Below are positions 48,565 through 63,425 of a stretch of DNA of 64,000 bases, one piece after another. A program made the translations under genes and the position numbers. The notes under the pieces were generated by a model. The model was not told where the DNA came from. It made no database searches and saw only the letters and a program-made list of their open reading frames with translations. The stretch lies in sequence record NC_049850.1; one strand, given 5' to 3'. Within the stretch, counting starts at the first letter, position 1. Every line of letters starts with the position of its first letter.

Positions 48565-50571
48565 TTATCGCGTGCCGTTGAGCGTGATCGATACGCCGCT
48601 AAAAGTCGTGTCCGTGACGCCCGCAGCGAACGTCATCACGTCGCCTGCTGCAAACGTGACCGGGTTCGATATGTTCACGGTGCCAGTCGACGAGCCCGCA
48701 GGATACGTGATGTCCCCCACCATTACACCGTTCTTGTAGATGCCTATGATCACGATGCCGGTCGTAGCCACCATCGAACTCGACAAGTTTCCGGTGATGC
48801 CGGAGAGTCCAGCAGCGAACGCCACGCTACGCGCGAATATCGTTCGGTAGAACGTAGCACCAGCTACCGGAGTTCCCGGGTAGAACGTCATGATGTCGTA
48901 CGGCTGCGGCGGTATGGTTGCTGTGGGCGGCGCTGTCCATGTGCCGTCTTCACGCAGATACCTAGTGGTGCCAGCCGTCGAACCCGGGCTCGGAACAAGA
49001 CCGTTTTTGGCGTTGACGCCGGACGGCCCGAACGTCGGAACGTTCATCTGGATCGACACGTTGTCGTTGCCATCGGCCCCGACTATGATGTTGCTGTCGT
49101 ATGCCACGATCTTGCGGAAACGAGTCTTGCCCGAGCCGTCGTTTGCGGCCGACATAACCGACGTGCCTGACGGTGCCGTGTTGTCGTAGGGTACAAGGTT
49201 CACGTTGCCGTTGCCGTCTGGCGACGCCCCGTTGACGGTCTTGACAGTTCCCGACGCCGTGATGTTGACCGTACCGTCTGCCGCCATCGACATGCCGGTC
49301 CCTAGCTTGATGCCGCCTAGGACCGTACTCGATGCTTGTGGCAGCGTGTACGGGGCCGGTATAGTAGGCAGTCCTAGCAAGTCTGAGTAGTTGCCAGTCT
49401 TAGCCACGGTGGCCAGATTCTGAACGTCGCTGGCTCGAATGGTCAACACATAGTTGCCTGTGTTGTCTGGGGCCGTCCCATTGATGCTAAGCACACCCAA
49501 GTTTGTGATCGTACTGTTCGTATAGTCGATCCCACGGCCTGCCGTGATGCCTTGACCCAAGTTCGAGCGTATATCGTCGAGCACCGCCTGAAGGTTCTTG
49601 CCGTAAGTAGTGCCAACGAGTGCTGCGCCACCTGCGCTACCCAGATCGGATTCAGCCACCACGTCAGCGATCCGGAGTGCGTTGATCTCGACCGTGACGA
49701 GCGGCGCTCCGGCCACGACCATGGCCGCGACTTCGGGGGCGAGCACGATCTGAACGCCGCCCGTGCCGTCATAGGCCAGTCGTTCGAGATATGCACCCAT
49801 CAAATAAACGTCAACGACGTTCGGGGTAAAGCCGCCGGGTATCACGAACGTGCCCTGACCATCGGCGGTCGCGTACACGATCTTGATGGTGCGTCGGTTC
49901 AGGTCCCCACTCACTATCAGGTTATCGTTAGGATCACGATCGATTGTGATGTTGGCACCCGCTACCAGTGTTCGGAACTTCATGCGCGCGTCATGCGCGC
50001 CAGAGTCCGAGATCAACGAGTTGCCGGTTCCGGGGTGTGCATCGACAGCCTCGATGGTGAGACTGCCGTCCCCCATTGGGTACATGTCGTTGATACGAAG
50101 GACGCCTGTGTTATTGACCCTGATGGTGCTGCCCGTGTTGTCGATGCCGATGCCGGGGCCGCCCTCGATCACCACCTCGCCTGTCTTGTTGTTGACACTG
50201 GTGACAATACCCTTGATGGGCATTGGATCAGTAGTCGAGTGCACGACGAACGTGATCTGCACTACTGCGGTGTCAGTGTCCGAGCGGTTGGTGATGAAGA
50301 ACTGATCTACCGGATCGTCAATGGACAGTTGCTGATCGACCGCTACTGCTGTTGGGGTTCCGGTCCCTACCACAGTCGACACAAACACAGGCTTGTCCGT
50401 GCTGATCGTGAGCGCCGAGAACCCAACATCCGCATCCCATTGCTGCCCCGGCTTCAGGACAATAGTCTGGTTGATGGTCTGATTGGCGTAGTACTTTGCC
50501 ACCAGATTCTCGTTGATGACTGGAACACCGGAGCCGCGAGTGCCTGTCTTGATTACGAAGCTGTCGCCCAT
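48565..50571 (-). CDS. 668-aa accessory fibre protein
   Basis: VTSVN..TG, LATVAKTGNYSDL and TLPQAS..LGGIK fibre repeats; C-terminal PYDI tip domain. Confidence 0.7.
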   Translation of the reverse strand: MGDSFVIKTGTRGSGVPVINENLVAKYYANQTINQTIVLKPGQQWDADVGFSALTISTDKPVFVSTVVGTGTPTAVAVDQQLSIDDPVDQFFITNRSDTDTAVVQITFVVHSTTDPMPIKGIVTSVNNKTGEVVIEGGPGIGIDNTGSTIRVNNTGVLRINDMYPMGDGSLTIEAVDAHPGTGNSLISDSGAHDARMKFRTLVAGANITIDRDPNDNLIVSGDLNRRTIKIVYATADGQGTFVIPGGFTPNVVDVYLMGAYLERLAYDGTGGVQIVLAPEVAAMVVAGAPLVTVEINALRIADVVAESDLGSAGGAALVGTTYGKNLQAVLDDIRSNLGQGITAGRGIDYTNSTITNLGVLSINGTAPDNTGNYVLTIRASDVQNLATVAKTGNYSDLLGLPTIPAPYTLPQASSTVLGGIKLGTGMSMAADGTVNITASGTVKTVNGASPDGNGNVNLVPYDNTAPSGTSVMSAANDGSGKTRFRKIVAYDSNIIVGADGNDNVSIQMNVPTFGPSGVNAKNGLVPSPGSTAGTTRYLREDGTWTAPPTATIPPQPYDIMTFYPGTPVAGATFYRTIFARSVAFAAGLSGITGNLSSSMVATTGIVIIGIYKNGVMVGDITYPAGSSTGTVNISNPVTFAAGDVMTFAAGVTDTTFSGVSITLNGTR

Positions 50572-50599
50572 AATTATCTCCGTTATGATGCTCTACTAA

Positions 50600-50609
50600 C
50601 TAAAATTAC
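50600..50609 (-). promoter_or_regulatory. class B motif GTAATTTTAG
   Basis: About 30 nt upstream of minus-strand ORF 50571; a second copy CCAATTTTAG at 50686-50695. Confidence 0.4.
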
Positions 50610-50614
50610 ACACC

Positions 50615-50643
50615 AAAAGAAAAACCCGGCTCGGGGCCGGGTT
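50615..50643 (-). terminator. intrinsic terminator
   Basis: AACCCGGC / GCCGGGTT stem with a U-rich tail on the minus strand. Confidence 0.7.
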
Positions 50644-50729
50644 CTTCTGCGTGCCGCCTATTAATGTACCCATTGCATAGATACACTAAAATTGGCTGTT
50701 CGGTTATTGCCAATACAGGGCCCTATTCG

Positions 50730-51848
50730 CTACGCGGTTGGCAATTCTGCGTTTACGGTCATGCCAAAACTACAGGTTCCGAAGCCTCCTAGTAGTTGGT
50801 TACCGGCAGGCAAGTTCAGGCGCACTGCGTTGTTCGTCTGTGAGGCCACGGTCGGATTGCCTGAGCTAAGGTTGGATACAGACACACCGCTGAACGCAAG
50901 CGTCGGGTTGCTGATACGCTTGTACTCGTACTGCGCCGTCATCTGCGGAACCTGTCCGTTGCCTACCTGTCCGGACCACGCGAAAGGTGTTCCAGAGAAC
51001 GCTTCGTAGTAGAACAGACAGTCGTTGAGCATGGACGCTAGGTCGCGAAACTCGTAGCCCGTAAATTGCGGCCCGAACTCAAGCTGAACTTCAGACAGCA
51101 GCGCCGTGAACGTGCCGGGAGACGCAGCAGTAGCAATCTGCAATCTCAGGTAGTGGTTGGTCCCCAGAGTTTTGCCCACAACCGAGGGCAGCGCAAACGT
51201 CTGCTGACACCGCGTCCACGTGTTGGCGGCCACCGCTATAGCCGAGCCCGCAAGCGCCACCGTCGACGAGCCGCCACTCCCGAAGTTCTGGAATAGCGAA
51301 GGCGTAAACGACATGGCCTTAGTCGTGTTCACGTAGAACGACACGGTTACGTTCTGGCCCGCTAGTGTTGACACGTCATTTATGGACTGCGAAACATACG
51401 GAGTGCCGGTGCCAGATGTTTCTTGCCACGACAGATAGCTGATCTCGTTATTCGAGGTTCCTGTGGCCATGCTGACCGTAGCCCCGTTGCTGAACATGTA
51501 CCAACGATCAGCCACAAACCCGGCAATGGCACCGGACGCCGGATTGCCGTACTGGTTGAGCCGGAAGCGCCCGTTGATGACACGGTTCTTTATAGAGCCA
51601 AGCGCGAAGTTGCCTGTGCTATCTGGACTCACCCCGTTGATCGTTTTCACCAACTGGTTGGTCGTATTGGTCGACGTATAGGCGGTGGCCGTGACCGCAG
51701 CACTTGCCAGCAACCGAACTGCGCCAGACGAATCCAGCGTATAGAGGTTGGCGTCGGCGGTGTTGATGGCCAGTTGCCCGGCCACCAAGTTGTCGACAGC
51801 GGGCGGCAAACCCGCTGTCGAGTTACGAAGGTGTTTTACGACGGTCAT
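50730..51848 (-). CDS. distal fibre subunit: gp37-like N-domain plus carbohydrate-binding jelly-roll tip
   Basis: GQLAINTAD; NRVINGRF...ADRW...VQLE.G. Confidence 0.7.
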   Translation of the reverse strand: MTVVKHLRNSTAGLPPAVDNLVAGQLAINTADANLYTLDSSGAVRLLASAAVTATAYTSTNTTNQLVKTINGVSPDSTGNFALGSIKNRVINGRFRLNQYGNPASGAIAGFVADRWYMFSNGATVSMATGTSNNEISYLSWQETSGTGTPYVSQSINDVSTLAGQNVTVSFYVNTTKAMSFTPSLFQNFGSGGSSTVALAGSAIAVAANTWTRCQQTFALPSVVGKTLGTNHYLRLQIATAASPGTFTALLSEVQLEFGPQFTGYEFRDLASMLNDCLFYYEAFSGTPFAWSGQVGNGQVPQMTAQYEYKRISNPTLAFSGVSVSNLSSGNPTVASQTNNAVRLNLPAGNQLLGGFGTCSFGMTVNAELPTA

Positions 51849-51861
51849 CAGTACACCTCAA

Positions 51862-52977
51862 TTAAGTCCCGGAGTAGGTGCCCTCGTCGAGCGTCAGGAC
51901 CGAAGTGTTGACCGAAAACACACCGCCCGCAACGGAAAGGCCCGAGCCCGCCTGTGCCAGACCGAGCGCCGCTGCCGATCCTACCGGCAGATTCGCTGTG
52001 GGCACTGTGGTTACCCACGTTGGCACATTGGACGCGTTGGTGGTCAGCACCGAGTTAGCTGCGGCACCCGCACCTTCCTGCGCGGCGCTGAGCGTCGATA
52101 CCCATGTCGGGGCACCGCTACCGTTCGTGGTCAACACATCGCCGTTACCAGCACCCGAGCCGAGTTGCGCAGCCGCAAAGGTTCCGGTCGTGATGTCTGC
52201 GGCACCAAGAACAACGGTGCCCGTCTTGCCGTTGACCGACGAGACCAGCGCGGAACTCTCGACGGTTCCCCACACGGTGCCGTTCGAGATAAGCCAGTCG
52301 CCCGTGCTGAACGTGAGTGCCGGTTGGCCTGTGCCCGGAGGCGAGTACGTGCCTGCCGCAGTTGCTATGTAGTACCAACCTTGGTTGCCCGAGGCCGCAG
52401 CCGGTAGCGTACTCGTGCCCGGTACGAAAGTCCCTTGGTACTGCACGGCACCCACAATAGAAGCCGGTAGATAGGACACGGGAATCTTGCTGCCCGAATC
52501 CAGAGGTGCCACACCGTTTGCGGCACCAACGCTAGAGGTAGCGACACCGCCAAGCGTAGTGAGCGCGGCCGAGGCCGAGGCCGCCGTCAGCAGCGCGGAG
52601 CCCGTTGCCGTAGCCCCGATTGCGGTCTGCACTGCTGCGGTTGTTGCGGCCGTGAACACGCCGATACCGACTGACGTACCACCCAGCGTGTTGAGGGCCG
52701 CGCTCTGGTTGGCGGCCGTGAACAAGGCGTTACCGACCGTCGTGGCTCCCAAGTTCGTGGGAGTCAATGCCACGTTCCCCGACGACGGCGATACTCCGTT
52801 GACCGAAGTAACCGTCCCGTTCGCGCCGGAATAGAATGTGGCAATCGAGTTGTCTGCGCCAAGAATGAAGATTTTCTTGTCGGCTGCGTTGATTGCGATT
52901 TGGCCGACCACCAGTTCTGTGGTGCTCGGTACTAGACCTGCGGTGCTGTTATGCAGATGTATTAGCTTTGCTGCCAT
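51862..52977 (-). CDS. middle fibre subunit: gp37-like N-domain, Ala/Gly/Thr shaft, C-terminal LDEGTY
   Basis: GQIAINAADKK; VTSVNG; YQGTF..GQGWYY. Confidence 0.7.
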   Translation of the reverse strand: MAAKLIHLHNSTAGLVPSTTELVVGQIAINAADKKIFILGADNSIATFYSGANGTVTSVNGVSPSSGNVALTPTNLGATTVGNALFTAANQSAALNTLGGTSVGIGVFTAATTAAVQTAIGATATGSALLTAASASAALTTLGGVATSSVGAANGVAPLDSGSKIPVSYLPASIVGAVQYQGTFVPGTSTLPAAASGNQGWYYIATAAGTYSPPGTGQPALTFSTGDWLISNGTVWGTVESSALVSSVNGKTGTVVLGAADITTGTFAAAQLGSGAGNGDVLTTNGSGAPTWVSTLSAAQEGAGAAANSVLTTNASNVPTWVTTVPTANLPVGSAAALGLAQAGSGLSVAGGVFSVNTSVLTLDEGTYSGT

Positions 52978-52988
52978 TTTTGGTTCTC

Positions 52989-53543
52989 TCAGTGCCCTAC
53001 GAATGCACCCTCATTGAGGGAAGATTGGATATCCTGCCAAGCGGCATTACTTCGTACGTATACCTTACTGTCTACAGGCGCGTCTCCTATTCCGCTGATA
53101 GCGGATGTTGGTGTTATTGGGGACACGCGACTGACCAAATACATGTCCCCGTTGGTAGCAGGTTGGTTCAGAGAGATTCCAGCAGCAGTAGACGAGAACG
53201 CAGTTGTCTTGTAGCCGTTCTTGTACACAGAGAGCAGTGCAGCACCACTGTTCCCTATGGGAATGAGGTTGTCGCCGGGATTGGCAACATACAAGAAGGC
53301 GTCAGATAGCGCGAATAGCTGCTGGCATATTAGTTGGTAGTCCAGAATAAACTGCCATCTGGACTTGGTGTCCGACCACTGGTAGGCCCCGGGGCTAAAG
53401 ACGCCGACGCTTTGGGTCAGTATCAGATTGAGGCCCCTCGTATCTGGGTACGCGGGCAGCGTGTCAACCAGTGGGGCAAACGCATTTGTGATGCCACCAT
53501 TGGATCGGACTATCGAATACGGGAAAAACAGAGCGACTGACAT
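52989..53543 (-). CDS. short fibre anchor protein with foldon-like motif
   Basis: N-domain paralogous to ORF 61884; GIGDAPVDSKVYVRSNAAW; ends LNEGAF. Confidence 0.6.
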   Translation of the reverse strand: MSVALFFPYSIVRSNGGITNAFAPLVDTLPAYPDTRGLNLILTQSVGVFSPGAYQWSDTKSRWQFILDYQLICQQLFALSDAFLYVANPGDNLIPIGNSGAALLSVYKNGYKTTAFSSTAAGISLNQPATNGDMYLVSRVSPITPTSAISGIGDAPVDSKVYVRSNAAWQDIQSSLNEGAFVGH

Positions 53544-53614
53544 GATTGTTTTTAGTTCTAAGTTTGCACTTCAGTGGTGGTCTCCACGTGTACTACTGGG
53601 GCCCCCGCCCCGAT

Positions 53615-54100
53615 TTACTGCGCTGTTGCTACAAGCCGTGCAGCGGCCCCCAGCCCACTGTCAAGCGCCGGTTGATCCTGCGGAATCTCGGTACTGTTCG
53701 TGAACAGGGACCAGTTTGCATCGGCCGCTGTCTCGGTCTTGTTTGCGTCTTTGTTCTGTTCTTCAGGCGTCTTGCCGTCACGCACACCATACGCGTCGTC
53801 GAGCGCTTTCTTGGCATCGTAGAGCCGCGATTTATCCGCGCCTTGCAGATTGCGGCCCTTGCGATTGATGAACCCATTCAACTTCGAACTGGCTTCGCCT
53901 CGATCTTCTGAGTGCTGCTTGAGTTGGCGCGCGATCTCGCTGGGGCTCTCGGTGAACGTGCCCTTCGGCAATTCTGATCCTGCGCGTCGGCCCTTGCCTC
54001 GGTACTGCTGGTCCATGCGCTGCTGCCACGTCTTGTCCTGATCCTGCTTAGGCGGGTCCGTGATTTGGCGCTCAGCCAGCAGCCTATAGGCTGCTTTCAT
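53615..54100 (-). CDS. second DUF3175-like protein
   Basis: LPKGTFTESPSEIA...LNGFINRKGRNL...L.DAK; GGAGAAGG RBS before ATG 54100. Confidence 0.6.
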   Translation of the reverse strand: MKAAYRLLAERQITDPPKQDQDKTWQQRMDQQYRGKGRRAGSELPKGTFTESPSEIARQLKQHSEDRGEASSKLNGFINRKGRNLQGADKSRLYDAKKALDDAYGVRDGKTPEEQNKDANKTETAADANWSLFTNSTEIPQDQPALDSGLGAAARLVATAQ

Positions 54101-54124
54101 AACCTTCTCCATGTTCTCTGGCTG

Positions 54125-54157
54125 CAATAAAATTGGGACGCCTCAGCGTCCCAATTT
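54125..54157 (-). terminator. intrinsic terminator overlapping class B motif (54127-54136)
   Basis: 12-bp perfect stem AAATTGGGACGC / GCGTCCCAATTT right after the stop of ORF 54446. Confidence 0.7.
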
Positions 54158-54158
54158 G

Positions 54159-54446
54159 TTAAGTCGCCGATGTATCGCTTGGCGGTACAGGCAATAGCTG
54201 TAGTATGTAGGCCGTGTACGGCCGCACAATTGTCGTGTTGCCTATGTGCTCGGTCTCGTAGTACGTACGCTCATCGTAGTGCAGTTCACGACTCGTACCA
54301 AGTGCCGCTGGATCGAGTATCAGGACCCCATAGTTGAACTCGATTAGGTAGTCGTCCGGAACACTTGCGAGTACGTCAGGCCACTCTGTTTCGTCCCACG
54401 TCGCTACGTAGAACGTTTTGCTTATATCATCCTTGTAGGTGTCCAT
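54159..54446 (-). CDS. hypothetical protein
   Basis: 95-aa acidic ORF with AAGGA RBS. Confidence 0.55.
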   Translation of the reverse strand: MDTYKDDISKTFYVATWDETEWPDVLASVPDDYLIEFNYGVLILDPAALGTSRELHYDERTYYETEHIGNTTIVRPYTAYILQLLPVPPSDTSAT

Positions 54447-54455
54447 ATGTTCCTT

Positions 54456-54821
54456 TTAACTCGGTGTGAACCAAGTAATAGTGGTCATTGGTTTAGCTGG
54501 GTCCAAGGTTGTCTGCGCTATGACCTCCAGCGTAACACCACTGTCTTGTGTGGTATACGGAAGGCCCGCTATGACTTCCATGGATACACCATAATCGTTT
54601 GCCGGAATTAGGCCGGACGCCAACACCTCCATTTGAACCGCATAGTCATTCGCATTGAGCGGGGGTATGATCAGGACTTGTCGTGCTACAGCCTGACTCT
54701 TAACCGCCGATGACTGCGACAGTAGAACCTGCCGCGCTACTGCCCTAGCAGTAGACGCGGGAGATTGAACCGTGAGTAGCTGTCTGGCTAGGGCTTGGGC
54801 CTTTACTGGGTTACCTGCCAT
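54456..54821 (-). CDS. 121-aa protein of six tandem beta repeats
   Basis: AQALARQLL / AVARQVLL / AVARQVLI, then NDYAVQMEVLA / NDYGVSMEVIA / QDSGVTLEVIA. Confidence 0.6.
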   Translation of the reverse strand: MAGNPVKAQALARQLLTVQSPASTARAVARQVLLSQSSAVKSQAVARQVLIIPPLNANDYAVQMEVLASGLIPANDYGVSMEVIAGLPYTTQDSGVTLEVIAQTTLDPAKPMTTITWFTPS

Positions 54822-54835
54822 GGGCTACTCCGTGA

Positions 54836-57088
54836 TTACGTTATGTGGTTCAAAGCAAACTGCGAGGCTTTGATCGAGTTGGTGGTCCACGCCTTGTTGC
54901 CGTTCGGATCGATATCAGACAGAACCGACACGTATGTAGGAGTCGTACCTGACACCGTGACTTGCGAACTGTCCGTTTCAGCACCGCTACTCCGCAACCC
55001 GACGCTAACAACCGGGGCCGTGGTCGAGGTTTTGGTGAAATACGTCTCCACCAACTGTGCCCGAGCCGTATAGCCTGCCGGAATCGTGTCTGCCGAAGAG
55101 TACACGTCAACGTCTCCGGAGTTCGAGGACGCTACGTTCTTCGAACTCAGGCTCGATAGTGCAGCCTGATTCACTGCGCTGGCGTTAGTGCCCGAGCCAC
55201 CGGTCGGGACCCATTGGGCCTGAACATCGGCATTGGGACGCTGAACCGCGATGTTGATTTGACCGAGGTTACCGCTAAGGCCGGTGCCGTCTTCGAGCGT
55301 CACGTAGATATCGTCGATTGCGGTAAAGCACCCCGAACGTTGGAAGCCGATCAGGAACAGGCCCGTCGTGTCGATGTTGCGTGTGAACTGATAGGTGAAC
55401 TTCGAGCCGATCTGCACACCGTCAATGTACATGTACACATCGAACTGGTTGACTGACGCGCTGTTCTTGACATACCGCATTTCGAAGTAGTGATACAGGT
55501 TCGACGTTGCAGACAGCGATCCTGTCAGATACGTTGTGCTGTTTCCTACCGAATCCAGAATACCCCACTGACGATTGCCACCAGAGGCCCCCGCCACGAA
55601 TAGGTGCAAGAATCCACCGTACGTGTTGAAGACCGTAAACTGGCCGTTCGCGGCGGGCGCTCCGGATGCAGATACCACCAGACCGCTGCCAACACCACCT
55701 GTCAATCCAGTTGCTGTGGCGTCGAGCGCCTCGTATACGTTCAGCGCCTGCCAATTGGTCACCATGTCTGGGGTGGTGGCGATAATACCGGTAACGGAGC
55801 TTGAGAACAGTACGTATTTGCTACCGTCATACAGATAATTTGTATAGCCGCCGGTCGCGACGTTCGTGAGTGGAGTGCCCACCAGAGTCCATGTAACACC
55901 ATCTAGTGTGCTGTATACCGACCCACCGTTTGTCACCGCATAGAGCGTGCTGCCGACCAGTATAAGCTGGGTCGGCAGTACTGGCAAACTCAGACCCAGC
56001 GTCATCGTCACTGTTCCGGACAGCGGACTAGGCGTTCCGGGAGTGCCGCCCGGATTGGCCGCGTACATAAGGCCCATGTTCGTGGCAAACACATAGCGAT
56101 TCGCAGCGGGCAAGAACGCCATATCCGTAATGTAGTTACCACTTGGACCCGGTGCCGTCCAACCCGTGGCGGTCACCGTGAAGCTGGTCCACGCGCCCGA
56201 TGTGTTCAGCGCTGAGTTTGCGGCAACTGCCATCAGCCCGTAACCGGAGTAGAAAAGAGCAACAACACCACTGCTACCGCCCAACAAACGACTTACGGTA
56301 GAAACCGCGTTAATGGCTTGAGTTGCACCGCCCCCGCTCGACGCTAGGGTAAAGTTGCCAGCGCCCTTCTTGGCGTCCCCCACCATTGCATACATGATGC
56401 CCTGAAATCCTGAACTGGTATTGGATATCACTGGAACAACATGAGGAAACGCCGAGTTGCCGGTGTCCACTGGACACATTGGGCTGGAAACCGACGCACT
56501 CGGAGTGACTGGTAGTGCTACGTTAGTCCAAGACGAACCGTTATTCGTTGAGTAGTTTATAGCCGTCGTATTAGTGCTTGTGTTGGAGACAACCAGCGGC
56601 ACGCTAGACGTTTGGGAGTACGTCATAGCTAGGGCACCAGATATCTGTGCTGGCGTGTCCGTCCAGTTGATCAGGTCTGGCGACGTGCTGATGTTCGTGC
56701 CTGTTGCCCGACGGAACCCCCAGTAACGGGTTCCGTCAAAACCGCACCCTTGGCCCAGTGCTGCGCTAACGTAATACCCAGCGTTGCTGTTGAGTTTGGC
56801 ACCAAAACCGAGTGTGATACCGCCCGCGTTCCAAGCCTGTTGAACTGTGTAGCCCGTATTGTAGTATCCCCACGTCTGGTCAGCAGCAGCGCCCCACAGA
56901 GCCGACGATGCAGCAGACGACTGAAACGCACCCACGGGACGCAGTGACGTTCCCGGGACGTTAGTAACGCTAGGCGCAAACGTCACCTTCTTGGTTGTGG
57001 GAGCCTGTGGGGAAACGCTCCAGTTTTGCAGCCGCAGGTCGCTGTCGTCGCGGGTCGTTTCAAAACCCTGCATGTATTTGAGACTCAT
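54836..57088 (-). CDS. LamG-like lectin with inserted Asp-box beta-propeller
   Basis: N-terminal MQGFE; YHYFEM...YIDG..IDDIYV; Asp-box-like STNNGSSW and STLDGVTW. Confidence 0.55.
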   Translation of the reverse strand: MSLKYMQGFETTRDDSDLRLQNWSVSPQAPTTKKVTFAPSVTNVPGTSLRPVGAFQSSAASSALWGAAADQTWGYYNTGYTVQQAWNAGGITLGFGAKLNSNAGYYVSAALGQGCGFDGTRYWGFRRATGTNISTSPDLINWTDTPAQISGALAMTYSQTSSVPLVVSNTSTNTTAINYSTNNGSSWTNVALPVTPSASVSSPMCPVDTGNSAFPHVVPVISNTSSGFQGIMYAMVGDAKKGAGNFTLASSGGGATQAINAVSTVSRLLGGSSGVVALFYSGYGLMAVAANSALNTSGAWTSFTVTATGWTAPGPSGNYITDMAFLPAANRYVFATNMGLMYAANPGGTPGTPSPLSGTVTMTLGLSLPVLPTQLILVGSTLYAVTNGGSVYSTLDGVTWTLVGTPLTNVATGGYTNYLYDGSKYVLFSSSVTGIIATTPDMVTNWQALNVYEALDATATGLTGGVGSGLVVSASGAPAANGQFTVFNTYGGFLHLFVAGASGGNRQWGILDSVGNSTTYLTGSLSATSNLYHYFEMRYVKNSASVNQFDVYMYIDGVQIGSKFTYQFTRNIDTTGLFLIGFQRSGCFTAIDDIYVTLEDGTGLSGNLGQINIAVQRPNADVQAQWVPTGGSGTNASAVNQAALSSLSSKNVASSNSGDVDVYSSADTIPAGYTARAQLVETYFTKTSTTAPVVSVGLRSSGAETDSSQVTVSGTTPTYVSVLSDIDPNGNKAWTTNSIKASQFALNHIT

Positions 57089-57097
57089 ACGTATTCC

Positions 57098-58240
57098 TTA
57101 ACGAGAAGTCTGGCCGAACTCTCCGGCATTCAGACTGGCTGTTGTCCAAGGGTTCGTGCCGTCTGTTTCCGCCACCGATAGATAGCGCGACGGGCCGTTC
57201 GATGTTGTCATTTGCGTCACACCGGACGAGCTTGATGTTTTGAAAGACCCCTGAATGTTCTGATACCGATTCGAGTTGCCACGCATCACGACCGCACGCA
57301 CATCGGATACCGCTGGCACGTTCCACTTGTAAGTGTCCGTCTGACCGGTAGCCGTTGCCGTGACGTAGTTAGCACCCGTGGTATCAGTTGCCGACTGCCA
57401 GTTGGGCTCTGCACCAGATGGAGTCCACTGGGTGACCGATCCGTTGCCAGTTGCCGAGACCGCGTAAATACGGCGTGCCGTGATAGCGGGTTCCGTTTCC
57501 GGGGTCGGCCACACACCAGCACCGAGAGGCCACGCGGCGTCCGCACCCGAAACGTTCTGAACCACGAGGTCATCAACGAAGTAGCTGATGAAGTTCGAGG
57601 CGAAGAACTTGAGGCGGTTCGCGATCTGCCCTGCCGTGAAGTTGTCTGCACTCCACGTCACCGGAATATCCTGCTGCAACGTCGTGCCGTTGATAGTGTA
57701 CGTGGCAGTCAGGACAGCCGACGATGCAGTCGATGTCGTGCTGTAGTACGAGAACTGAAGCTGTACCCAGTAGTACGTGTTCAACTGGATGTTGAAGTTG
57801 TACGGAGAACTGGTCGGGCTGTTGATGTTGGTTACGAACTGGAGGTTCGTGCCGCCCGACGACGAATTGCTGATGTTAAGGAGCGGATACCACGAGCCCG
57901 GAACGCCTGCGGTGCCGAGCGCGAGCAGCGTGCCCGAGCCCGGGTTCATGGTGCCCACGTTCAGCCAGAAGTTGAACGCGAACGCGGCCTTACCGCTGGT
58001 GGCAGTGTTCCCGCGAATCATCTGCATGGTCGACGGGAACTGGTACTCAAAGCCCGAGGTCAGGGACGCCGGAGCGCCCGACACCGGGAACGTAAGCGCC
58101 GCACCGCCAAATGCACCAGCCGACAAGTTCACCTGTCCGGCTATCGAGCTATTCGTCACGAACCATGGGTAGTTTGCGGCAAGCGTGCCCGAAGGGTAGA
58201 TGTCAAACCCCTCGGCCGCTGCAATAAATTGTGCTGCCAT
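57098..58240 (-). CDS. ConA/laminin-G-like lectin protein
   Basis: N-terminal AEGFD; YYWVQ...FVDDLVV; C-terminal GNGSVTQWTP..PNW domain paralogous to ORF 48555. Confidence 0.6.
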   Translation of the reverse strand: MAAQFIAAAEGFDIYPSGTLAANYPWFVTNSSIAGQVNLSAGAFGGAALTFPVSGAPASLTSGFEYQFPSTMQMIRGNTATSGKAAFAFNFWLNVGTMNPGSGTLLALGTAGVPGSWYPLLNISNSSSGGTNLQFVTNINSPTSSPYNFNIQLNTYYWVQLQFSYYSTTSTASSAVLTATYTINGTTLQQDIPVTWSADNFTAGQIANRLKFFASNFISYFVDDLVVQNVSGADAAWPLGAGVWPTPETEPAITARRIYAVSATGNGSVTQWTPSGAEPNWQSATDTTGANYVTATATGQTDTYKWNVPAVSDVRAVVMRGNSNRYQNIQGSFKTSSSSGVTQMTTSNGPSRYLSVAETDGTNPWTTASLNAGEFGQTSR

Positions 58241-58250
58241 TTGTTACTCC

Positions 58251-59546
58251 TTATTGCCACGTGCCACGGATGGTGATGGTGATGAGCGAAACGTTCGTCG
58301 TCGCAAACTGATAGGACAACTGATCGCCTGCCGCGTAATTGGTTGTGCTACCCGTGCTCGTAAACGAGTTGCCGTTTACCGTGTCGATGTTGAGCGTGCC
58401 GACCTGCGTACCCGTATTCGGAGTGGCCGCCGGGTACTTCATGATGCGTATGGTTGCGGTCGTGCCACTGAGTAGCCGCACGTTTGCCACCGAATTCGCC
58501 CAGTTCTGCGGGAACTGGCACGGGTCCGTGAACATGTAGAACACTTCGTTCACGATGTTCGGGTTGCCCTGAACGTTGACGGGCAGACGCGCGATGCTCG
58601 GGTTGGGCGGTTGGTTCAGCAGGTCCGTGTAGGAGCCAGTGAGCGCCACCGTCGACAGCGTACCCGACGCGAGGTTACCTGCGGTCGCTGCGGTGTTCGT
58701 GAACTGCACGCCACCCAGCGTCGCGGTCGTTGCCTTGGGCAGCGAATACGGCGTAGGCTTGTTCGACAGGTCGTTGTAGTTGCCGGACGTGGCGACGGTC
58801 GCAAAGCCCGCGATGTCGGTAGCCGTCAGCGTGACCGTGCCAGTCTTACCGTTCACGGACGTGACGTTGGAGCCCGAGTTAGCGATCTTCGTCCACACGT
58901 TGTTCGACACCAGCGCCAAGTCACCGACAGCCCACGTGCTGATGCCGTCGATTGACGTAGAGCCCGCAACCGATACCACGTAGTACGAACCGTTTGCCTG
59001 CGCAGTGCCACCAGCAACACCACCGTTCGCGAGAACCGGGTTGTTCGCGTTAGCGTCCCAGTTCCCCTTATACGATAGGCCGCCCGTGATAGACGAGGGC
59101 AGGTATTTCGATGCGACAGTACCAGACGGGCCCGAAAGCAAGTCGGTAGGCAGACCAACGTCTGCGGCCGTAAGCGTCACGGTGCCCGAGCGCGAGTTGA
59201 CGGATACGACACCTGCGTTGGTAATGTTGCCGTTCGAGTCCACAGCCAGACCGCCGCTGGCCGGAACCATCACACCCCCGAGCACCGCTGCCGACGCTTT
59301 CGGGAGTACGTAATTGCCAGCCGACGGTTTGTTGGTCAGGTCGTTGTAGTTGCCGGTGAACGCCACCGTAGACAGATCACCCGGACCCAGACCGATCTCC
59401 TGAATAGCACCCGTGTTGTCGAGTGTGTACAGTTTTCGGTCTGGGAAGTTGATGGCCAACTGGCCGGTGAGTATCTGCGCCGTGGTGGGGCGAGCACCAG
59501 CGGTCAGCAGCCGTGGGTGCTGAACCGGGATGTTAAGAGCAGTCAT
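58251..59546 (-). CDS. fibre subunit: gp37-like N-domain, shaft repeats, tip domain
   Basis: AGARPT...GQLAINFPDRKLYT; TGNYNDL repeats; tip paralogous to the C-terminus of ORF 50571. Confidence 0.7.
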   Translation of the reverse strand: MTALNIPVQHPRLLTAGARPTTAQILTGQLAINFPDRKLYTLDNTGAIQEIGLGPGDLSTVAFTGNYNDLTNKPSAGNYVLPKASAAVLGGVMVPASGGLAVDSNGNITNAGVVSVNSRSGTVTLTAADVGLPTDLLSGPSGTVASKYLPSSITGGLSYKGNWDANANNPVLANGGVAGGTAQANGSYYVVSVAGSTSIDGISTWAVGDLALVSNNVWTKIANSGSNVTSVNGKTGTVTLTATDIAGFATVATSGNYNDLSNKPTPYSLPKATTATLGGVQFTNTAATAGNLASGTLSTVALTGSYTDLLNQPPNPSIARLPVNVQGNPNIVNEVFYMFTDPCQFPQNWANSVANVRLLSGTTATIRIMKYPAATPNTGTQVGTLNIDTVNGNSFTSTGSTTNYAAGDQLSYQFATTNVSLITITIRGTWQ

Positions 59547-59559
59547 TGTGTATTCCTAA

Positions 59560-61884
59560 TTAGCCGATGACGCCGCCATCGATAGTCAAGTTCTGCAAGA
59601 ACGAAAGCGGAACTGCCGCGTCGCCTGTTGTCGGTGTGGTCAGCCCGTTCAGGACTTGACTACCCATGCTTAGCGGGCCCGTCATGGTCACGTTACCTGA
59701 AACAGGCACAGCGTTCACGTTTGCCGCCGTAAGCGAGACGTTGCCGCTACCGTTCGGGCTGATGCCGTTGACCGTCGACACGGTGCCTGCTGGAATCGCA
59801 GCGGTAACCGTGACCAACCCGTTAGCTTCGGAGAGCGTAACGTTTTGGCCTGCAACCAGCGACTTGATGATCGCGGAGTTTGCAGGCGGGCTGGATTCGA
59901 CGAGCAGTACAGCGCCTGTACCGGCTTGACCCGTGACCGACGTTATCGCGTTGGCGATGGATGGGACAACGGACCATCCCAAGTTCTGGCGCATGTAGCC
60001 GTTACCATCGTTCGGGGCCTCCGGAACGCCAGTCCCCGAAATCTGAATCGAGTTGCCTGTGTTCGACAGCGAAATCGCGGGGCCAGCCGTGAACGTGATA
60101 GCGCCAGTCAGCGCGCCAGACGTTCCTGCTGTGATGGACGAAACGCCGCCCGAAGCAGTCGACGCGATGGAAAGGTTCCCGTTCGCGTCAGGAGTGATAG
60201 TCACGCCAGAACCCGCAACCAGCGTCTTCAACTTGATGTTGCCGGTCGTCGAGCCGCTGTCGGAAATCAGCGAAGTGCCGGTTGCCCCGTTGTTGTTCGT
60301 GGCCTGCACAACGACCACACCGGTTTGTCCGGACACCGAAGCAACAGCACCGGTTGCCGAGATCGTGCCGTCGGCCGCGATGCTGATACCAGAGCCCGCC
60401 TTGACACCGCCTAGGTTCACACCGGTCGGTGCCGCAAGCGACAGGTTACCGGTTCCGTCCACAGTCAGACCGGCCTTGACGATAACACCACCGATGGTGC
60501 TGGTCGTAGCCGGGTTCAGCACTTGGTTCGCAGCAATCGTCAGCGTCTTGTTGTCGCCAGACGGCGTGATCGTGACGTTGGAGCCTGCGGCCAGCGACTT
60601 GATCGTCGCGATACCGCCCGCAGTCCCGTTGTTGTCCACCAGACCCGTGCCCGTGCCTTCGTTGTTCACTGCCGTCAGTGCGCCCGAGGTTGCTGTCGAA
60701 CTGATGGTGATGTTGCCGTTAGCGTCCGTGCCAAGCTGAATCAGGTTACCAGCAACCAGCGTCTTCAGTTTTGCGTTGCCGGTAGTCGACCCGTTATTGC
60801 TGATGAGCGACGTGCCTGTTGCAGCGTTGTTGTCCGTGGTCTGAATGACCACGACTCCGGTCTGGCCAGATACGGACTGGACATTACCCTGCGCATTGAT
60901 TTGCAGGTTGCCGTTCGGATCGGAGGCCAGCGTAACGTTGGAGCCAGCGACCAGCGTCTTCAACTTGATGTTGCCGGTCGTCGCCCCACTATCCGTAATC
61001 AGCGACGTGCCGGTTGACCCGTTGTTATTCGTAGCCTGAATGACAACGGCACCAGTTTGTGCGGACACCGAAGAAACCGGAGCCGGAACTGGTGCCGGGA
61101 CTGAGATCGTGCCGTCAGCCGTCACGTTGATGTTGGCACCGATCTTGACTGCGCCAAGAACTGTGCTCGATGCCACGGCCGACACGATCTTGCCGTCGGC
61201 ACTCAACTGAATGCCCTGATCTTGCGGGACATACACACCGCCTAGATGGGCCGCGTCCTGCCCCGCTGCCGGAAGAACGTACTGGTTTGCGCCCGTCAGG
61301 ACGAGGTTGCCTGATCCGTCTGGCGCGATGGTGATGCCAGAGCCCGCGACAAGCATCGCTAGACTCAAATTACCGGTTGTGGACCCATCGTTCTTGATGA
61401 GCGACACGCCGTTGGGAGCATTGTTGTCGACAAGCTTCACTACGACGTTGCCCTGCGGGTCCGGCGTCTGGTTGTTGACCGACCGAACGTCACCGGCAGT
61501 GTAGTTGGCCGTCGTCGTAGCCCCGTACACGGACCCATCGTTTGCGATGAACGTGGGGCCGCCCGGGTACTCGACACCGTTACGCCACACCTTCGAGCGC
61601 GTCGGGAGGCCCGAGTTGGGGTCCGTTACTTCGTAGAACAGATCGATTGCAGCACCGTCGATGATGCCTTGGCAGATCGCGGTGTACGGAAGGGCAAAGC
61701 GCCACCGGCTCTGGCCGATGTCATAGATGTACGCGCCCTTGTCACGACCCGGGCCCTCCGTGGACGCAAGGATAACCGCCTCGGCCGTAGGGTCGATCGG
61801 CAGCGTGTCCACAGTAGGTGCCACCACCGTGTTCGCCACCCCGTTTCGGTGTAGCGTCAGGGAGTAGTAAAAAGTGCTGTCCAT
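59560..61884 (-). CDS. long proximal fibre/anchor protein with internal repeats and foldon-like motif
   Basis: Repeated GTSLI.D.G.TTGNIKLKTLVAG; GVPEAPNDGNGYMRQNLGW; ends TIDGGVIG. Confidence 0.7.
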   Translation of the reverse strand: MDSTFYYSLTLHRNGVANTVVAPTVDTLPIDPTAEAVILASTEGPGRDKGAYIYDIGQSRWRFALPYTAICQGIIDGAAIDLFYEVTDPNSGLPTRSKVWRNGVEYPGGPTFIANDGSVYGATTTANYTAGDVRSVNNQTPDPQGNVVVKLVDNNAPNGVSLIKNDGSTTGNLSLAMLVAGSGITIAPDGSGNLVLTGANQYVLPAAGQDAAHLGGVYVPQDQGIQLSADGKIVSAVASSTVLGAVKIGANINVTADGTISVPAPVPAPVSSVSAQTGAVVIQATNNNGSTGTSLITDSGATTGNIKLKTLVAGSNVTLASDPNGNLQINAQGNVQSVSGQTGVVVIQTTDNNAATGTSLISNNGSTTGNAKLKTLVAGNLIQLGTDANGNITISSTATSGALTAVNNEGTGTGLVDNNGTAGGIATIKSLAAGSNVTITPSGDNKTLTIAANQVLNPATTSTIGGVIVKAGLTVDGTGNLSLAAPTGVNLGGVKAGSGISIAADGTISATGAVASVSGQTGVVVVQATNNNGATGTSLISDSGSTTGNIKLKTLVAGSGVTITPDANGNLSIASTASGGVSSITAGTSGALTGAITFTAGPAISLSNTGNSIQISGTGVPEAPNDGNGYMRQNLGWSVVPSIANAITSVTGQAGTGAVLLVESSPPANSAIIKSLVAGQNVTLSEANGLVTVTAAIPAGTVSTVNGISPNGSGNVSLTAANVNAVPVSGNVTMTGPLSMGSQVLNGLTTPTTGDAAVPLSFLQNLTIDGGVIG

Positions 61885-61889
61885 AGTTC

Positions 61890-62561
61890 TCACCACGTGA
61901 ATGCGGCGTTAGCCGAGTTGAGGCTTGGCATGCGTTGTTGAACAAGCTGTGTCAACGCTTCGCCCTGAGCCCCGTTTATTTTTTGTGTAACCGCCGTGTA
62001 TGCGTCCTGATCTGCGAGTGCGCTCAGCCCGTTCTGGCTCCAGTACCAACCGGCACTCATGAACAGATCGGCAGCTTGCGTCACAAGGTCAGGATTGCTG
62101 ACGACGCGCGTGTCCCCGTAGATGGCTTGGCTGTATGCCGTGTAGTTCGAGCGCCCCGTCAGGTGGAATGCACCTCGCCCGCGAAACAGCCAGCCATCAC
62201 CAGAAGCCACGTTGCCGTTGCCCATGCGCGAGGCATAGACCAGATTCGCAAGCTTCTGCGGGTTGCCAACATAGCTCGGCGCATACGCCTTGCTGGTATC
62301 GGCTTGGTTCATGGTGAACCGCGAAGGCCACACGGCGACCAGCCGTTCCGGCGTCGTGTAGTTCAAGTTCTCCACGAGCTTCGAGAAGCCCGCAGTCTCG
62401 TACGCGGCTTGCGCCATGAAATAACGCACACGGCGCGGACTCGCGTCGATACCGAATTTTGCCATCGCCGTGTTTGCTGCGTCTGCCATCCCCTGAAGCT
62501 GTGCGGCCGGAATTTGTGGCGCAAATTTTGCGAGTTGCGCGCTCGTGATTGCGTATGCCAT
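61890..62561 (-). CDS. glycoside hydrolase family 19 endolysin
   Basis: FMAQAAYET..F..L.ENLNY, GDGW.FRGRG..LTGRSNY and SAGWYW. Confidence 0.88.
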   Translation of the reverse strand: MAYAITSAQLAKFAPQIPAAQLQGMADAANTAMAKFGIDASPRRVRYFMAQAAYETAGFSKLVENLNYTTPERLVAVWPSRFTMNQADTSKAYAPSYVGNPQKLANLVYASRMGNGNVASGDGWLFRGRGAFHLTGRSNYTAYSQAIYGDTRVVSNPDLVTQAADLFMSAGWYWSQNGLSALADQDAYTAVTQKINGAQGEALTQLVQQRMPSLNSANAAFTW

Positions 62562-63025
62562 TAGTTCACCTCAAGAAATCCGATACGTGCGTCAACGACA
62601 CCGTTCTTGAAAGGATTGAATTTGTAGATCATCTGAACGTGCGCCGTGTACGTGCCGGGGCGCAGGTTAGGAACTACCAGATCGATCTTCTCAAAAGCGA
62701 AACCTTTGACCTCCACGTTCATGTGTTGCGGATACGTGTAGACGACGTTGCCTGCGGCGTCCGTCAAGAACACGTTGTAGACTGCACGTCGTTCGGTCTT
62801 GCTTTCGACGATGAGTGGTGGGTGGATAGAAACTTCGGACCCCGCACTAACTTGGTAGGTGTCCCTGATTGACACCGTTGTCTCTGGCGCGGGTTCGACG
62901 ATCCAGACACAGGCCAAGATCATGAGCACGACCATCACCCATGGCGATAGTCGTGTGATCCATTGATCGACCCATAGTCCGAAACCAAAAAGTGCGTGGT
63001 GGCCGTTTCCTGCGAGCGTCTTCAC
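62561..63025 (-). CDS. single-TM protein with periplasmic beta-sandwich, in the lysis cassette
   Basis: TM WVMVVLMILACVWIV; lies between holin and endolysin. Confidence 0.55.
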   Translation of the reverse strand: MKTLAGNGHHALFGFGLWVDQWITRLSPWVMVVLMILACVWIVEPAPETTVSIRDTYQVSAGSEVSIHPPLIVESKTERRAVYNVFLTDAAGNVVYTYPQHMNVEVKGFAFEKIDLVVPNLRPGTYTAHVQMIYKFNPFKNGVVDARIGFLEVN

Positions 63026-63026
63026 G

Positions 63027-63386
63027 TCATTCTCCTTTGTTTCCCTCAGTCGCCGGAGACTGGGCCGCGTCGTCCACCTTGAACCCCAGACTCTCCAAAC
63101 GTTTCGTGTAAAAGCTTTCGAACAGCGCGATTGCGCGTGTCCCCATGAGACCGGCCGTCGCGATCAGGATTGCTGCAATCGGCCCGTCGATGTTGAACCA
63201 CTCGCAAGCCCAGAACGTCATGAGACCCGCGAATCCCGCCGTGATCAGGTCGCGCACCAGCGTGACGAACCTGAAATCTTGCCCGTTGTTGAGGTACTTG
63301 ACTGCGCCTCCGAAAATCGCGAGTCCGAAAACCCACGCGTACGTGCTCAGTCCGTAGCCGAACGGGTCCTTGTCACCCTGAAACAT
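63027..63386 (-). CDS. holin (LydA-like)
   Basis: Two to three TM helices, LAIFGGAVKYL...AGFAGL...AGLMG; charged C-terminus. Confidence 0.78.
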   Translation of the reverse strand: MFQGDKDPFGYGLSTYAWVFGLAIFGGAVKYLNNGQDFRFVTLVRDLITAGFAGLMTFWACEWFNIDGPIAAILIATAGLMGTRAIALFESFYTKRLESLGFKVDDAAQSPATEGNKGE

Positions 63387-63425
63387 GATCGTGCTCCATG
63401 TCAGTCACTCCTAGATTAACCCGTT

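What the first reader, a model, noticed from the sequence alone, without database searches (positions are those of the whole stretch)
50730..61884. Plug-and-socket daisy-chain code for multi-subunit fibres
Seen: three minus-strand genes (59546, 52977, 51848) begin with the same ~45-aa domain (H..TAG..P....GQ[LI]AIN..D.K[LI][YF]). Each of the three is immediately preceded in the operon by a gene whose product ends in a matching short motif: TIDGGVIG (ORF 61884), LNEGAFVGH (ORF 53543) and LDEGTYSGT (ORF 52977). ORF 52977 has both the socket and the plug, so it would be an extender. Known: this N-domain resembles the T4 gp37 N-terminus (as I recall, KRSKIAGTRP...EGELAINLKDRTIF), which joins gp37 to the preceding fibre subunit. 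Inference: a generic connector lets the phage build two jointed fibres (61884>59546 and 53543>52977>51848), with gene order mirroring assembly order. New receptor-binding tips could be swapped in by adding any gene with the socket.
Basis: partly seen in the sequence, partly recalled or inferred. Interest (0 to 1): 0.85.

Follow-up and report, generated by a model that had tools for sequence, protein, structure and literature searches.

The report
Reused end-to-end joint in phage fibres
A jumbo Burkholderia phage seems to build two segmented tail fibres with the joint phage T4 uses between fibre proteins gp36 and gp37, and the joint's two halves (a short C-terminal tail motif, then a 50-residue N-terminal domain in the next gene) recur as neighbours in many uncultured phages.

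Summary
The window is Burkholderia phage BcepSaruman. Exactly three ORFs carry the roughly 50-residue N-terminal domain (the socket): gp280, gp273 and gp272. Exactly three ORFs of 100 aa or more end in the short motif (the plug): gp281, gp274 and gp273. Each plug gene lies 11-13 nt upstream of a socket gene.

The socket is homologous to the N-terminus of the T4-type gp37 distal long-tail-fibre subunit (PHROG 1699; BLASTP 9e-11; 849 phage records). In four Straboviridae genera, gp36 ends in the same kind of motif directly before gp37.

In 77 of 144 dereplicated socket genes the upstream ORF ends in the plug. Only 35 of 2451 other ORF ends do (Fisher p about 3e-79).

The two first genes, gp281 and gp274, share a roughly 140-residue N-terminal domain, probably the virion anchor. 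A strong terminator-like hairpin follows gp272. The sister phage BcepSauron lacks the three-gene fibre through one deletion.

Physical contact between plug and socket is not shown. No multimer tool was available, no solved structure covers the joint, and the monomer models were weak.

Verdict: a real feature, and a new variant of the known T4 gp36-gp37 joint. The motif rule and the proteins carrying both ends (extenders) appear undescribed in the literature I could search. Interest is moderate to high.

The parts
59560..61884 (-). gp281 (774 aa): proposed proximal segment of fibre A. It has the anchor domain, a long repeat shaft and a C-terminal plug.
   Evidence: ORF and termini; annotated CDS H1O16_gp281; PHROG 9625 repeats; orthologues in BCSR5, Motura and L131 keep both the plug and the following socket gene.
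61471..61884 (-). Anchor domain of gp281 (about residues 1-138), shared with gp274.
   Evidence: Pairwise alignment; the HMM hits only gp281 and gp274 in the window, E 6.9e-55 and 6e-47.
59563..59586 (-). Plug of gp281 (last 8 residues, TIDGGVIG).
   Evidence: one of only three plug-pattern ORF ends in the window.
58251..59546 (-). gp280 (431 aa): proposed distal segment (tip) of fibre A. It starts 13 nt after the gp281 stop codon.
   Evidence: annotated 'putative long tail fiber protein'; PHROG 1699 on residues 12-68, E 1.3e-7; BLASTP 9e-11 against Tequatrovirus gp37.
59376..59546 (-). Socket (N-terminal domain, about residues 1-57) of gp280.
   Evidence: Alignment A1; HMM E 3.7e-15; tblastn of this piece alone finds 849 phage records, mostly gp37 N-termini.
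52989..53543 (-). gp274 (184 aa): proposed short proximal adaptor of fibre B, consisting of the anchor domain plus a plug.
   Evidence: seven homologues in which the columns of the end motif are invariant.
53115..53543 (-). Anchor domain of gp274 (about residues 1-143).
52992..53018 (-). Plug of gp274 (last 9 residues, LNEGAFVGH).
51862..52977 (-). gp273 (371 aa): proposed middle segment (extender) of fibre B, with a socket at the N-end and a plug at the C-end.
   Evidence: more than 40 full-length homologues keep both ends; the same three-gene chain occurs in L147 and L148.
52807..52977 (-). Socket of gp273 (about residues 1-57).
   Evidence: in the AF2 monomer model this is a four-strand region with pLDDT 78-84.
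51865..51891 (-). Plug of gp273 (last 9 residues, LDEGTYSGT).
50730..51848 (-). gp272 (372 aa): proposed distal tip of fibre B.
   Evidence: PHROG 4492 'tail fiber protein' E 8.5e-39 on residues 31-353, and PHROG 1699 on residues 8-44.
51678..51848 (-). Socket of gp272 (about residues 1-57).
50618..50648 (-). Terminator-like hairpin (13 pairs followed by a T run) directly downstream of gp272.
   Evidence: This is a consensus scan only. Terminator-like sites overall were not enriched over shuffles, but this is by far the longest stem found.

Best explanation
BcepSaruman encodes two segmented tail fibres whose segments join end to end through the same kind of joint that links gp36 to gp37 in the T4 long tail fibre. 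Fibre A is gp281 followed by gp280. Fibre B is gp274, then gp273, then gp272.

Each fibre starts with the same N-terminal domain of about 140 residues (in gp281 and gp274), which most likely fixes it to the baseplate or to another virion part. Every later segment starts with a gp37-type N-terminal domain of about 50 residues. The segment before it ends in a short motif: hydrophobic, Asp/Asn, x, Gly, x, aromatic/hydrophobic, at or within 3 residues of the C-terminus.

I infer that the trimeric C-terminal end of one segment docks onto or into the trimeric N-terminal domain of the next. Gene order would then equal assembly order, and the short gaps between the genes would favour equal amounts of the partners. 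The two tips (gp280 and gp272) have unrelated bodies, so the two fibres probably recognise different surface structures.

Shown: the homology of the N-domain to gp37, the conservation of both halves, and their strongly non-random adjacency in many lineages.
Inferred: direct contact of the motif with the domain, trimeric state, serial order, the attachment role of the shared first domain, and the receptor-binding role of the tips.
For: Identity and anatomy of the locus.

Socket and gp37:
- PHROG 1699 'long tail fiber protein distal subunit' matches profile positions 11-69 with E 1.3e-7.
- BLASTP of gp280 against Tequatrovirus gp37 gives 9e-11 over the N-terminus.
- The 56-aa socket alone finds 849 phage records, almost all annotated gp37 or long tail fibre distal subunit, including phage T2 gene 37.
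- In T4, trimeric gp36 binds the N-terminal region of gp37 (PMC3004832).
- gp36 of Tequatrovirus, Dhakavirus, Lazarusvirus and Slopekvirus ends with Asp, x, Gly, x, Tyr/Phe at the very C-terminus, directly before gp37.

Relatives keep the pairs: BCSR5, Motura (two loci), RsoM2USA, L131, L147, L148 and L129.

Large test:
- All 177 socket ORFs have the domain within the first 60 or so codons.
- The upstream ORF ends in the plug in 77 of 144 dereplicated pairs, against 35 of 2451 other ORF ends; p 3e-79.
- In the reverse direction, 83 of 117 plug ORFs are followed by a socket, against 81 of 2323 others.
- A further 23 socket genes have a plug ORF within 3 kb upstream.
- 3784 cluster representatives carry the domain, at residue 1 in about 145 of the best 150.

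Extenders: 22 of 131 complete socket ORFs, after removing one false pattern match; the gp273 family.

Covariation: Asp at plug position -4 goes with Arg/Lys at socket column 9 in 47 of 51 pairs, while non-Asp plugs go with a non-basic residue in 32 of 40. The association also holds inside two socket sub-classes, p 4e-4 and 4e-3.

Shared anchor domain. Terminator-like hairpin after gp272. Different tip bodies.
Against: - No direct evidence of contact. The PDB holds no chain matching the socket profile. AF2 monomer models were poor to middling, with pLDDT 55 and 67, and Foldseek found nothing at E below 0.88.
- No virion proteomics for this phage was found, so even virion membership is inferred from homology.
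- The bodies of gp274 and gp281 are not gp36 homologues: there is no PF03903 hit (compared) and no BLASTP similarity.
- About 30-45% of socket genes have no plug gene directly upstream, and 34 plug ORFs are not directly followed by a socket. Adjacency is therefore frequent but not obligatory.
- Motura gp152 has a socket but ends in a coiled-coil-like tail without a plug, and is still followed by another socket gene.
- The covariation is not corrected for phylogeny and has exceptions, for example Asn with Lys in L148 and Asp with Gly in Motura gp119/gp120.
- The three BcepSaruman plugs are atypical in carrying 1-3 residues after the aromatic or hydrophobic position.
Confidence: 0.7

Rival explanations
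1. The genes are fibre genes and the N-domain is the joint, but the short C-terminal motif is not the contact surface. It would be only the conserved end-cap or trimer-closing element of a common fibre module. The N-domain of the next protein would bind elsewhere on its partner, or the two would be held together through a third protein.
For: 34 plug-ending ORFs in the sampled loci are not directly followed by a socket gene. The motif is short and Gly-rich, as many fibre repeat ends are. The upstream proteins fall into only 12 BLAST groups, one of them holding 48 of 73 members, so part of the enrichment could reflect a shared module. No structural evidence exists for contact.
Against: The motif is kept at the extreme C-terminus in proteins whose bodies are unrelated: gp36 at 215-237 aa, gp274 at 184 aa, gp281 at 774 aa, and metagenomic proteins up to 3412 aa. 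65 of 77 plugs end exactly at the aromatic residue. One plug position co-varies with one socket column, also within sub-classes.
Confidence: 0.17
2. The socket proteins are not chained in series. Each attaches separately, either as alternative or branched tips on one adaptor or directly on the baseplate. Fibre B would then be a branch point rather than a three-segment rod.
For: Motura has one plug gene (gp151) followed by two socket genes, and the first of these (gp152) lacks a plug. RsoM2USA_418 has a socket with no plug gene before it. Branched receptor-binding complexes are known in other phages, for example CBA120 (cited in PMC12143355).
Against: In BcepSaruman the numbers match one to one, three plugs and three sockets, each adjacent. 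gp273 itself carries a conserved plug in more than 40 homologues, which has no use if nothing is attached to it. The same three-gene order is kept in L147 and L148.
Confidence: 0.1
3. The similarity and adjacency are chance or compositional effects of Gly/Thr-rich fibre sequences.
For: The motifs are short, and fibre proteins are compositionally biased.
Against: HMM E-values reach 1e-15, and hits are restricted to three ORFs in the window. Only three plug ends occur among 216 ORFs. The enrichment has p about 1e-79 against ORFs from the same loci, which share their composition.
Confidence: 0.01

Closest known systems
T4-type long tail fibre, distal half: the gp36-gp37 joint (Straboviridae)
   Same: The N-terminal domain of the downstream subunit is homologous. 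The upstream subunit ends in Asp, x, Gly, x, aromatic at the C-terminus. The genes are adjacent and in assembly order. In T4, trimeric gp36 binds the N-terminal region of gp37 (PMC3004832).
   Different: The upstream proteins here are not gp36 homologues, with no PF03903 hit and no BLASTP similarity. No gp34- or gp35-like proteins were seen among the nine neighbours. The joint is used three times in one phage, once in a protein that carries both halves. The BcepSaruman plugs carry 1-3 extra residues.
Fibre loci of RSL1-like jumbo phages: Burkholderia phage BCSR5, Achromobacter phage Motura, Ralstonia phage RsoM2USA
   Same: Orthologous gene pairs have the same anchor domain, plug and socket, and the same neighbouring genes: endolysin and holin on one side, ConA-like paralogues on the other.
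   Different: BCSR5 shows only the fibre-A pair in the stretch read. Motura places the second chain elsewhere in the genome, with two socket genes after the plug gene. phiRSL1 itself showed no socket gene in the stretch read.
Branched or adaptor-mediated receptor-binding complexes (CBA120 tailspikes, G7C gp63.1/gp66, KP32-type anchor-branch systems)
   Same: Several receptor-binding proteins are assembled on one another through conserved N-terminal attachment modules while the distal parts vary. This comparison rests on my own knowledge, and CBA120 is cited in PMC12143355.
   Different: Those systems use T4 gp10-like or other side-on docking domains and form branches. No such domain was detected here. 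The anatomy here points to end-to-end joints.

Membership tests
T4-type gp36-gp37 fibre joint | The downstream subunit begins with the gp37-type N-terminal domain | tested here: met
   PHROG 1699 gives E 1.3e-7 for gp280 and 3.8e-3 for gp272. BLASTP against Tequatrovirus gp37 gives 9e-11. tblastn of the 56-aa piece hits 849 records, mostly gp37. gp273 joins the family through the HMM with E 6.1e-12.
T4-type gp36-gp37 fibre joint | The gene immediately upstream ends in the Asp/Asn, x, Gly, x, aromatic motif seen at the C-terminus of gp36 | tested here: met
   gp36 ends in four Straboviridae genera. The ends of gp281, gp274 and gp273. Here 1-3 extra residues follow the motif, and gp281 has Ile at the aromatic position.
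T4-type gp36-gp37 fibre joint | The upstream subunit belongs to the gp36 family (Pfam PF03903) | tested here: not met
   Tequatrovirus gp36 hits PF03903 with E 9e-26. gp281 and gp274 have no Pfam hit, and BLASTP against gp36 gives E 0.043 or worse.
T4-type gp36-gp37 fibre joint | The trimeric C-end of the upstream subunit physically binds the N-region of the downstream subunit | not testable with these tools
   No multimer prediction is available. No PDB chain matches the socket profile. The monomer models were uninformative.
Complete T4-type long tail fibre (gp34-gp35-gp36-gp37) | A gp34-like proximal half-fibre and a monomeric gp35-like hinge are encoded alongside | tested here: not met
   None of the nine proteins between 47518 and 61884 hits a gp34 or gp35 family in Pfam or PHROGs. 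The rest of the genome was not searched.
Branched receptor-binding complexes with gp10-like docking domains | A T4 gp10-like (XD) branching domain in the anchor protein | tested here: not met
   No such Pfam or PHROG hit in gp281, gp274 or their neighbours.

The most novel reading that the evidence does not exclude
The two-part joint would be a widely shared, portable assembly code. A C-terminal motif of 6-8 residues, usually ending the protein at Phe or Tyr, would pair with an N-terminal domain of about 50 residues. Pair-specific residues, for example Asp at plug position -4 facing Arg/Lys at socket column 9, would decide which segments join. One virion could then assemble several different multi-segment fibres without mis-pairing, and fibre architecture (number, order and partners of segments) could be read directly from genome sequence in thousands of phage lineages.
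Probability: 0.3. Interest if true: 0.75.

Novelty: new variant of a known kind. Interest (0 to 1): 0.6.

Why it matters
Multi-subunit fibres are hard to annotate. Most of these genes are labelled 'hypothetical', and neither half of the joint is covered by a Pfam or NCBIfam model.

A sequence rule may say which gene product sits on which. A protein end with Gly fixed two residues before a terminal aromatic residue, followed by a gene that opens with the gp37-type domain, would mark a joint. That rule would let fibre composition and segment order be read from genomes and metagenomes. It would also mark where structural work on the still unsolved gp36-gp37 junction should look.

The rule also gives a concrete picture of how distal fibre parts come to be combined with different proximal parts in nature. 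In the sample, one conserved socket is joined to at least 18 unrelated distal bodies.

Tried and rejected
- The search for related loci with the 10-sequence socket alignment failed because no stretch was conserved enough. The first DNA pattern had too few plain bases. I replaced it with two narrower patterns, so the sample is biased towards sockets carrying the exact core Gly, Gln/Glu, Leu, Ala, Ile, Asn.
- Single-sequence and profile searches of the PDB found nothing for the socket.
- The AF2 model of gp274 from 7 sequences had pLDDT 55 and was not used for fold search. The AF2 model of gp273 from 32 sequences had pLDDT 67, and Foldseek against the PDB gave nothing below E 0.88. I discarded a weak resemblance of the helical repeat region to the phi29 head fibre (E 3.4).
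- I looked for natural fusions with a plug directly followed by a socket inside one chain, as Rosetta-stone evidence. None turned up: all 177 sockets are N-terminal. The few internal or tandem copies (P0121, P0131, P0253) are not preceded by a plug, and P0124 is a spurious propeller-repeat hit.
- The PHROG 9625 hits of both gp281 and gp280 first suggested a fused relative. They map to repeats and to a C-terminal domain, not across the joint.
- I tested whether gp274 or gp281 are gp36 homologues and rejected the idea.
- Searches for the motif strings in the paper library returned no phage paper.
- No host-range or virion proteome data for BcepSaruman or BcepSauron were found.
Full report
WHAT THE WINDOW IS. 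The region 50730-61896 is 100% identical to Burkholderia phage BcepSaruman (NC_049850, 263.7 kb, genus Sarumanvirus, a jumbo myovirus of B. cenocepacia). The window corresponds to about 124001-188000 of that record. The minus-strand genes of interest are:
- gp281, 59560-61884, 774 aa
- gp280, 58251-59546, 431 aa
- gp274, 52989-53543, 184 aa
- gp273, 51862-52977, 371 aa
- gp272, 50730-51848, 372 aa

The lysis genes (GH19 endolysin, antiholin, holin) lie just upstream of gp281. [quoted passage not shown]

OBSERVATION, PART 1: THE SHARED N-DOMAIN (SOCKET). gp280, gp273 and gp272 begin with an alignable stretch of about 50 residues with 14 invariant columns. I built a profile from this domain in many phages. 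It hits exactly these three ORFs among all six-frame ORFs of the window, with E 3.7e-15, 7.1e-15 and 6.1e-12. It hits none in the extra 4 kb of the phage that I fetched, which includes the annotated tail fibre gp287.

OBSERVATION, PART 2: THE C-TERMINAL MOTIFS (PLUG). Of 216 stop-to-stop ORFs of 100 aa or more in the window, exactly three end in the plug pattern. They are gp281, gp274 and gp273. Each lies 11-13 nt upstream of a socket gene. By my arithmetic the chance of that arrangement for three randomly placed ORFs is about 1 in 1.66 million.

RELATIVES KEEP THE PAIRS.
- BCSR5: a 611-aa orthologue of gp281 ends ...VIDNGTF and is followed by a socket gene.
- Motura: gp119 ends ...TFDRGTF and is followed by the socket gene gp120. 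Elsewhere in the genome, gp151 (socket, end ...LLDEGTY) is followed by two socket genes.
- RsoM2USA: a 571-aa protein ending ...VIDGGTY precedes a 1257-aa socket protein.
- Uncultured contigs L147 and L148 carry the same three-gene chain as gp274-gp273-gp272. L131 carries the gp281-gp280 pair.
- In the seven known members of the gp274 family, the Asn, Glu, Gly, Phe and Gly columns of the end are invariant.
- More than 40 full-length homologues of gp273, many on contigs of 230-284 kb, keep both the socket and the end motif.

LINK TO T4. PHROG 1699 ('long tail fiber protein distal subunit') matches residues 12-68 of gp280 to profile positions 11-69, with E 1.3e-7. It also matches gp272. BLASTP of gp280 against gp37 of a Tequatrovirus gives 9e-11 over the N-terminus. 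The 56-aa socket alone finds 849 phage records by tblastn. Nearly all are Straboviridae, at the start of genes annotated gp37 or long tail fibre distal subunit, and they include phage T2 gene 37.

In Tequatrovirus, Dhakavirus, Lazarusvirus and Slopekvirus the gene before gp37 is gp36. It ends with Asp, x, Gly, x, Tyr/Phe as its very last residues. The T4 literature states that trimeric gp36 binds the N-terminal region of gp37 (PMC3004832). The bodies of gp274 and gp281, however, are not gp36 homologues.

Two exact-pattern scans of IMG/VR for the socket core gave 139 loci.
- Position of the socket: all 177 socket ORFs found there by the profile have the domain within the first 60 or so codons after the preceding in-frame stop.
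- Dereplicated comparison: after dereplication at 70% identity, the upstream ORF ends in the plug in 77 of 144 pairs. Among other ORF ends of the same loci the figure is 35 of 2451. The odds ratio is 79 and Fisher p is 3e-79.
- Without dereplication: 72 of 121 against 38 of 1808.
- Reverse direction: 83 of 117 plug ORFs are followed by a socket within 300 nt, against 81 of 2323 other ORFs.
- Non-adjacent plugs: a further 23 socket genes have a plug ORF within 3 kb upstream, often one small gene away.

Column shares of the 77 plugs, counted back from the aromatic residue:

| Position | Share |
|---|---|
| -5 | Ile 44 |
| -4 | Asp 48, Ser 15 |
| -3 | Gly 62 |
| -2 | Gly 77 |
| -1 | Thr 54 |
| 0 | Phe 52, Tyr 22, Ile 3 |

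65 of the 77 proteins end exactly at position 0. Many pairs overlap by one base or are a few bases apart, as expected for coupled translation.

A search of 1.84 billion cluster representatives with the three window sockets found 3784 proteins at E of 1e-3 or better. The domain starts at residue 1 in about 145 of the best 150.

FURTHER ANATOMY.
- Shared first domain: gp281 and gp274 share an N-terminal domain of about 140 residues. In the window it is found only in these two proteins. It also occurs in their orthologues and in Motura gp128. I read it as the virion-attachment end, which is an inference.
- Transcription unit: a 13-pair hairpin with a T run lies at 50618-50648 on the minus strand, just after gp272. 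It fits the end of a transcription unit (a consensus scan only).
- Tips: the two tips differ. The gp280 C-terminal region matches PHROG 9625. gp272 matches PHROG 4492, 'tail fiber protein', with E 8.5e-39.
- Natural variant: the sister phage BcepSauron is 96.6% identical across the locus. It has a single deletion of about 2.4 kb that removes gp274 and gp273 entirely and truncates gp272, leaving a 3' remnant ORF. The gp281-gp280 pair is intact. Fibre B is therefore absent from a phage that has been isolated and propagated.

MODULARITY. Once one false pattern match is set aside, 22 of 131 complete socket ORFs also end in a plug. The parts that follow the socket fall into 18 BLAST groups, and the proteins that carry the plug fall into 12. 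Their lengths run from 157 to 3412 aa.

COVARIATION. Among 77 dereplicated pairs, the strongest plug-socket column pair is plug position -4 with socket column 9, with z 8.4 against shuffles. Over 91 unique pairs, Asp goes with Arg/Lys in 47 of 51, and non-Asp goes with a non-basic residue in 32 of 40 (p 8e-13). The association holds inside two socket sub-classes, p 4e-4 and 4e-3.

In BcepSaruman the pairs are Asp/Arg (gp281-gp280), Asn/His (gp274-gp273) and Asp/Arg (gp273-gp272). The shuffles do not correct for shared descent, and exceptions exist. I treat this as a hint of contact and of some pair specificity, not as proof.

STRUCTURE. No PDB chain matches the socket, by sequence or by profile. 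The 2026 T4 cryo-EM preprint modelled the distal rod from predictions at low resolution. The AF2 monomer model of gp274 was poor, with pLDDT 55. The model of gp273 reached pLDDT 67. Its socket is a four-strand region with pLDDT 78-84, followed by seven short helices and a small beta domain, and the C-terminal third is unreliable. Foldseek found nothing significant.

MECHANISM. The best-supported reading is two segmented fibres joined end to end by a gp36-gp37-type joint, with gene order equal to assembly order. There are two main rivals. In the first, the motif is an end-cap rather than the contact surface. In the second, the socket proteins are alternative or branched tips rather than serial segments. 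The Motura locus, with two sockets after one plug, shows that non-serial arrangements may exist. In BcepSaruman the one-to-one match of three plugs and three sockets, together with the conserved plug on gp273, favours a serial chain.

NOVELTY. The T4 joint and the T4 principle that gene order equals assembly order are long known. Four things appear not to be described in the literature I could search:
- the short C-terminal motif as the conserved partner of the gp37-type N-domain
- the spread of this pairing far beyond Straboviridae
- proteins that carry both halves
- the use of the joint three times in one jumbo phage

Neither half of the joint is covered by Pfam or NCBIfam. The library lacks most subscription journals, so prior description cannot be excluded.

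CAVEATS.
It is not a census.
- ORFs were called mechanically.
- The plug patterns were defined after seeing the first examples, though the background was scored with the same patterns.

Noticed in passing
window 17584-19122 (+): A 512-aa ORF whose last 250 or so residues alternate runs of Asp/Glu with short Lys-rich blocks (Asp 96, Lys 82 and Glu 63 of 512 residues). It accounts for the AT-skew spike of 0.425 at 18001-20000.
   Followed up: no
window 54456-54821 (-), gp277: A 121-aa protein made of two kinds of short internal repeats. It is conserved directly after the 750-aa protein in BCSR5, Motura, RSL1 (ORF185) and contig L148. Its function is unknown.
   Followed up: partly
window 57098-58240, 54836-57088, 47518-48555 (all -): Three paralogues (gp279, gp278, gp270) share N- and C-terminal motifs. 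They give a weak Laminin_G_3 (ConA-like) hit and match PHROGs 30887 and 2448. RSL1 ORF183/184, BCSR5 and Motura have the same set between the fibre genes.
   Followed up: partly
L002 (BcepSauron), region matching window 50730-53543: The sister phage carries one deletion of about 2.4 kb. It removes gp274 and gp273 and truncates gp272, leaving a 3' remnant ORF. The gp281-gp280 pair is intact.
   Followed up: yes
window 48565-50571 (-), gp271, and 58251-59546 (-), gp280: The two proteins share a fibre repeat of about 60 residues (BLASTP 3e-10). The repeat also weakly matches a crAss-like phage head-fibre chain (7qof, E 0.001). gp271 has no socket.
   Followed up: partly
protein P0121 (metagenomic, 1101 aa): The core of the socket occurs here as nine tandem repeats inside one protein, so the fold can also serve as a repeating shaft unit. 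P0131 and P0253 carry two or three copies.
   Followed up: partly
L005 (Motura), 5992-11144: One protein with both socket and plug (gp151) is followed by two socket genes. The first of them (gp152) ends in a coiled-coil-like tail without a plug and overlaps the second (gp153). This may be an alternative-tip or branched arrangement.
   Followed up: no
window 50618-50648 (-): A 13-pair GC-rich hairpin followed by a T run lies between gp272 and gp271. It is the longest terminator-like stem in 47000-63500.
   Followed up: no
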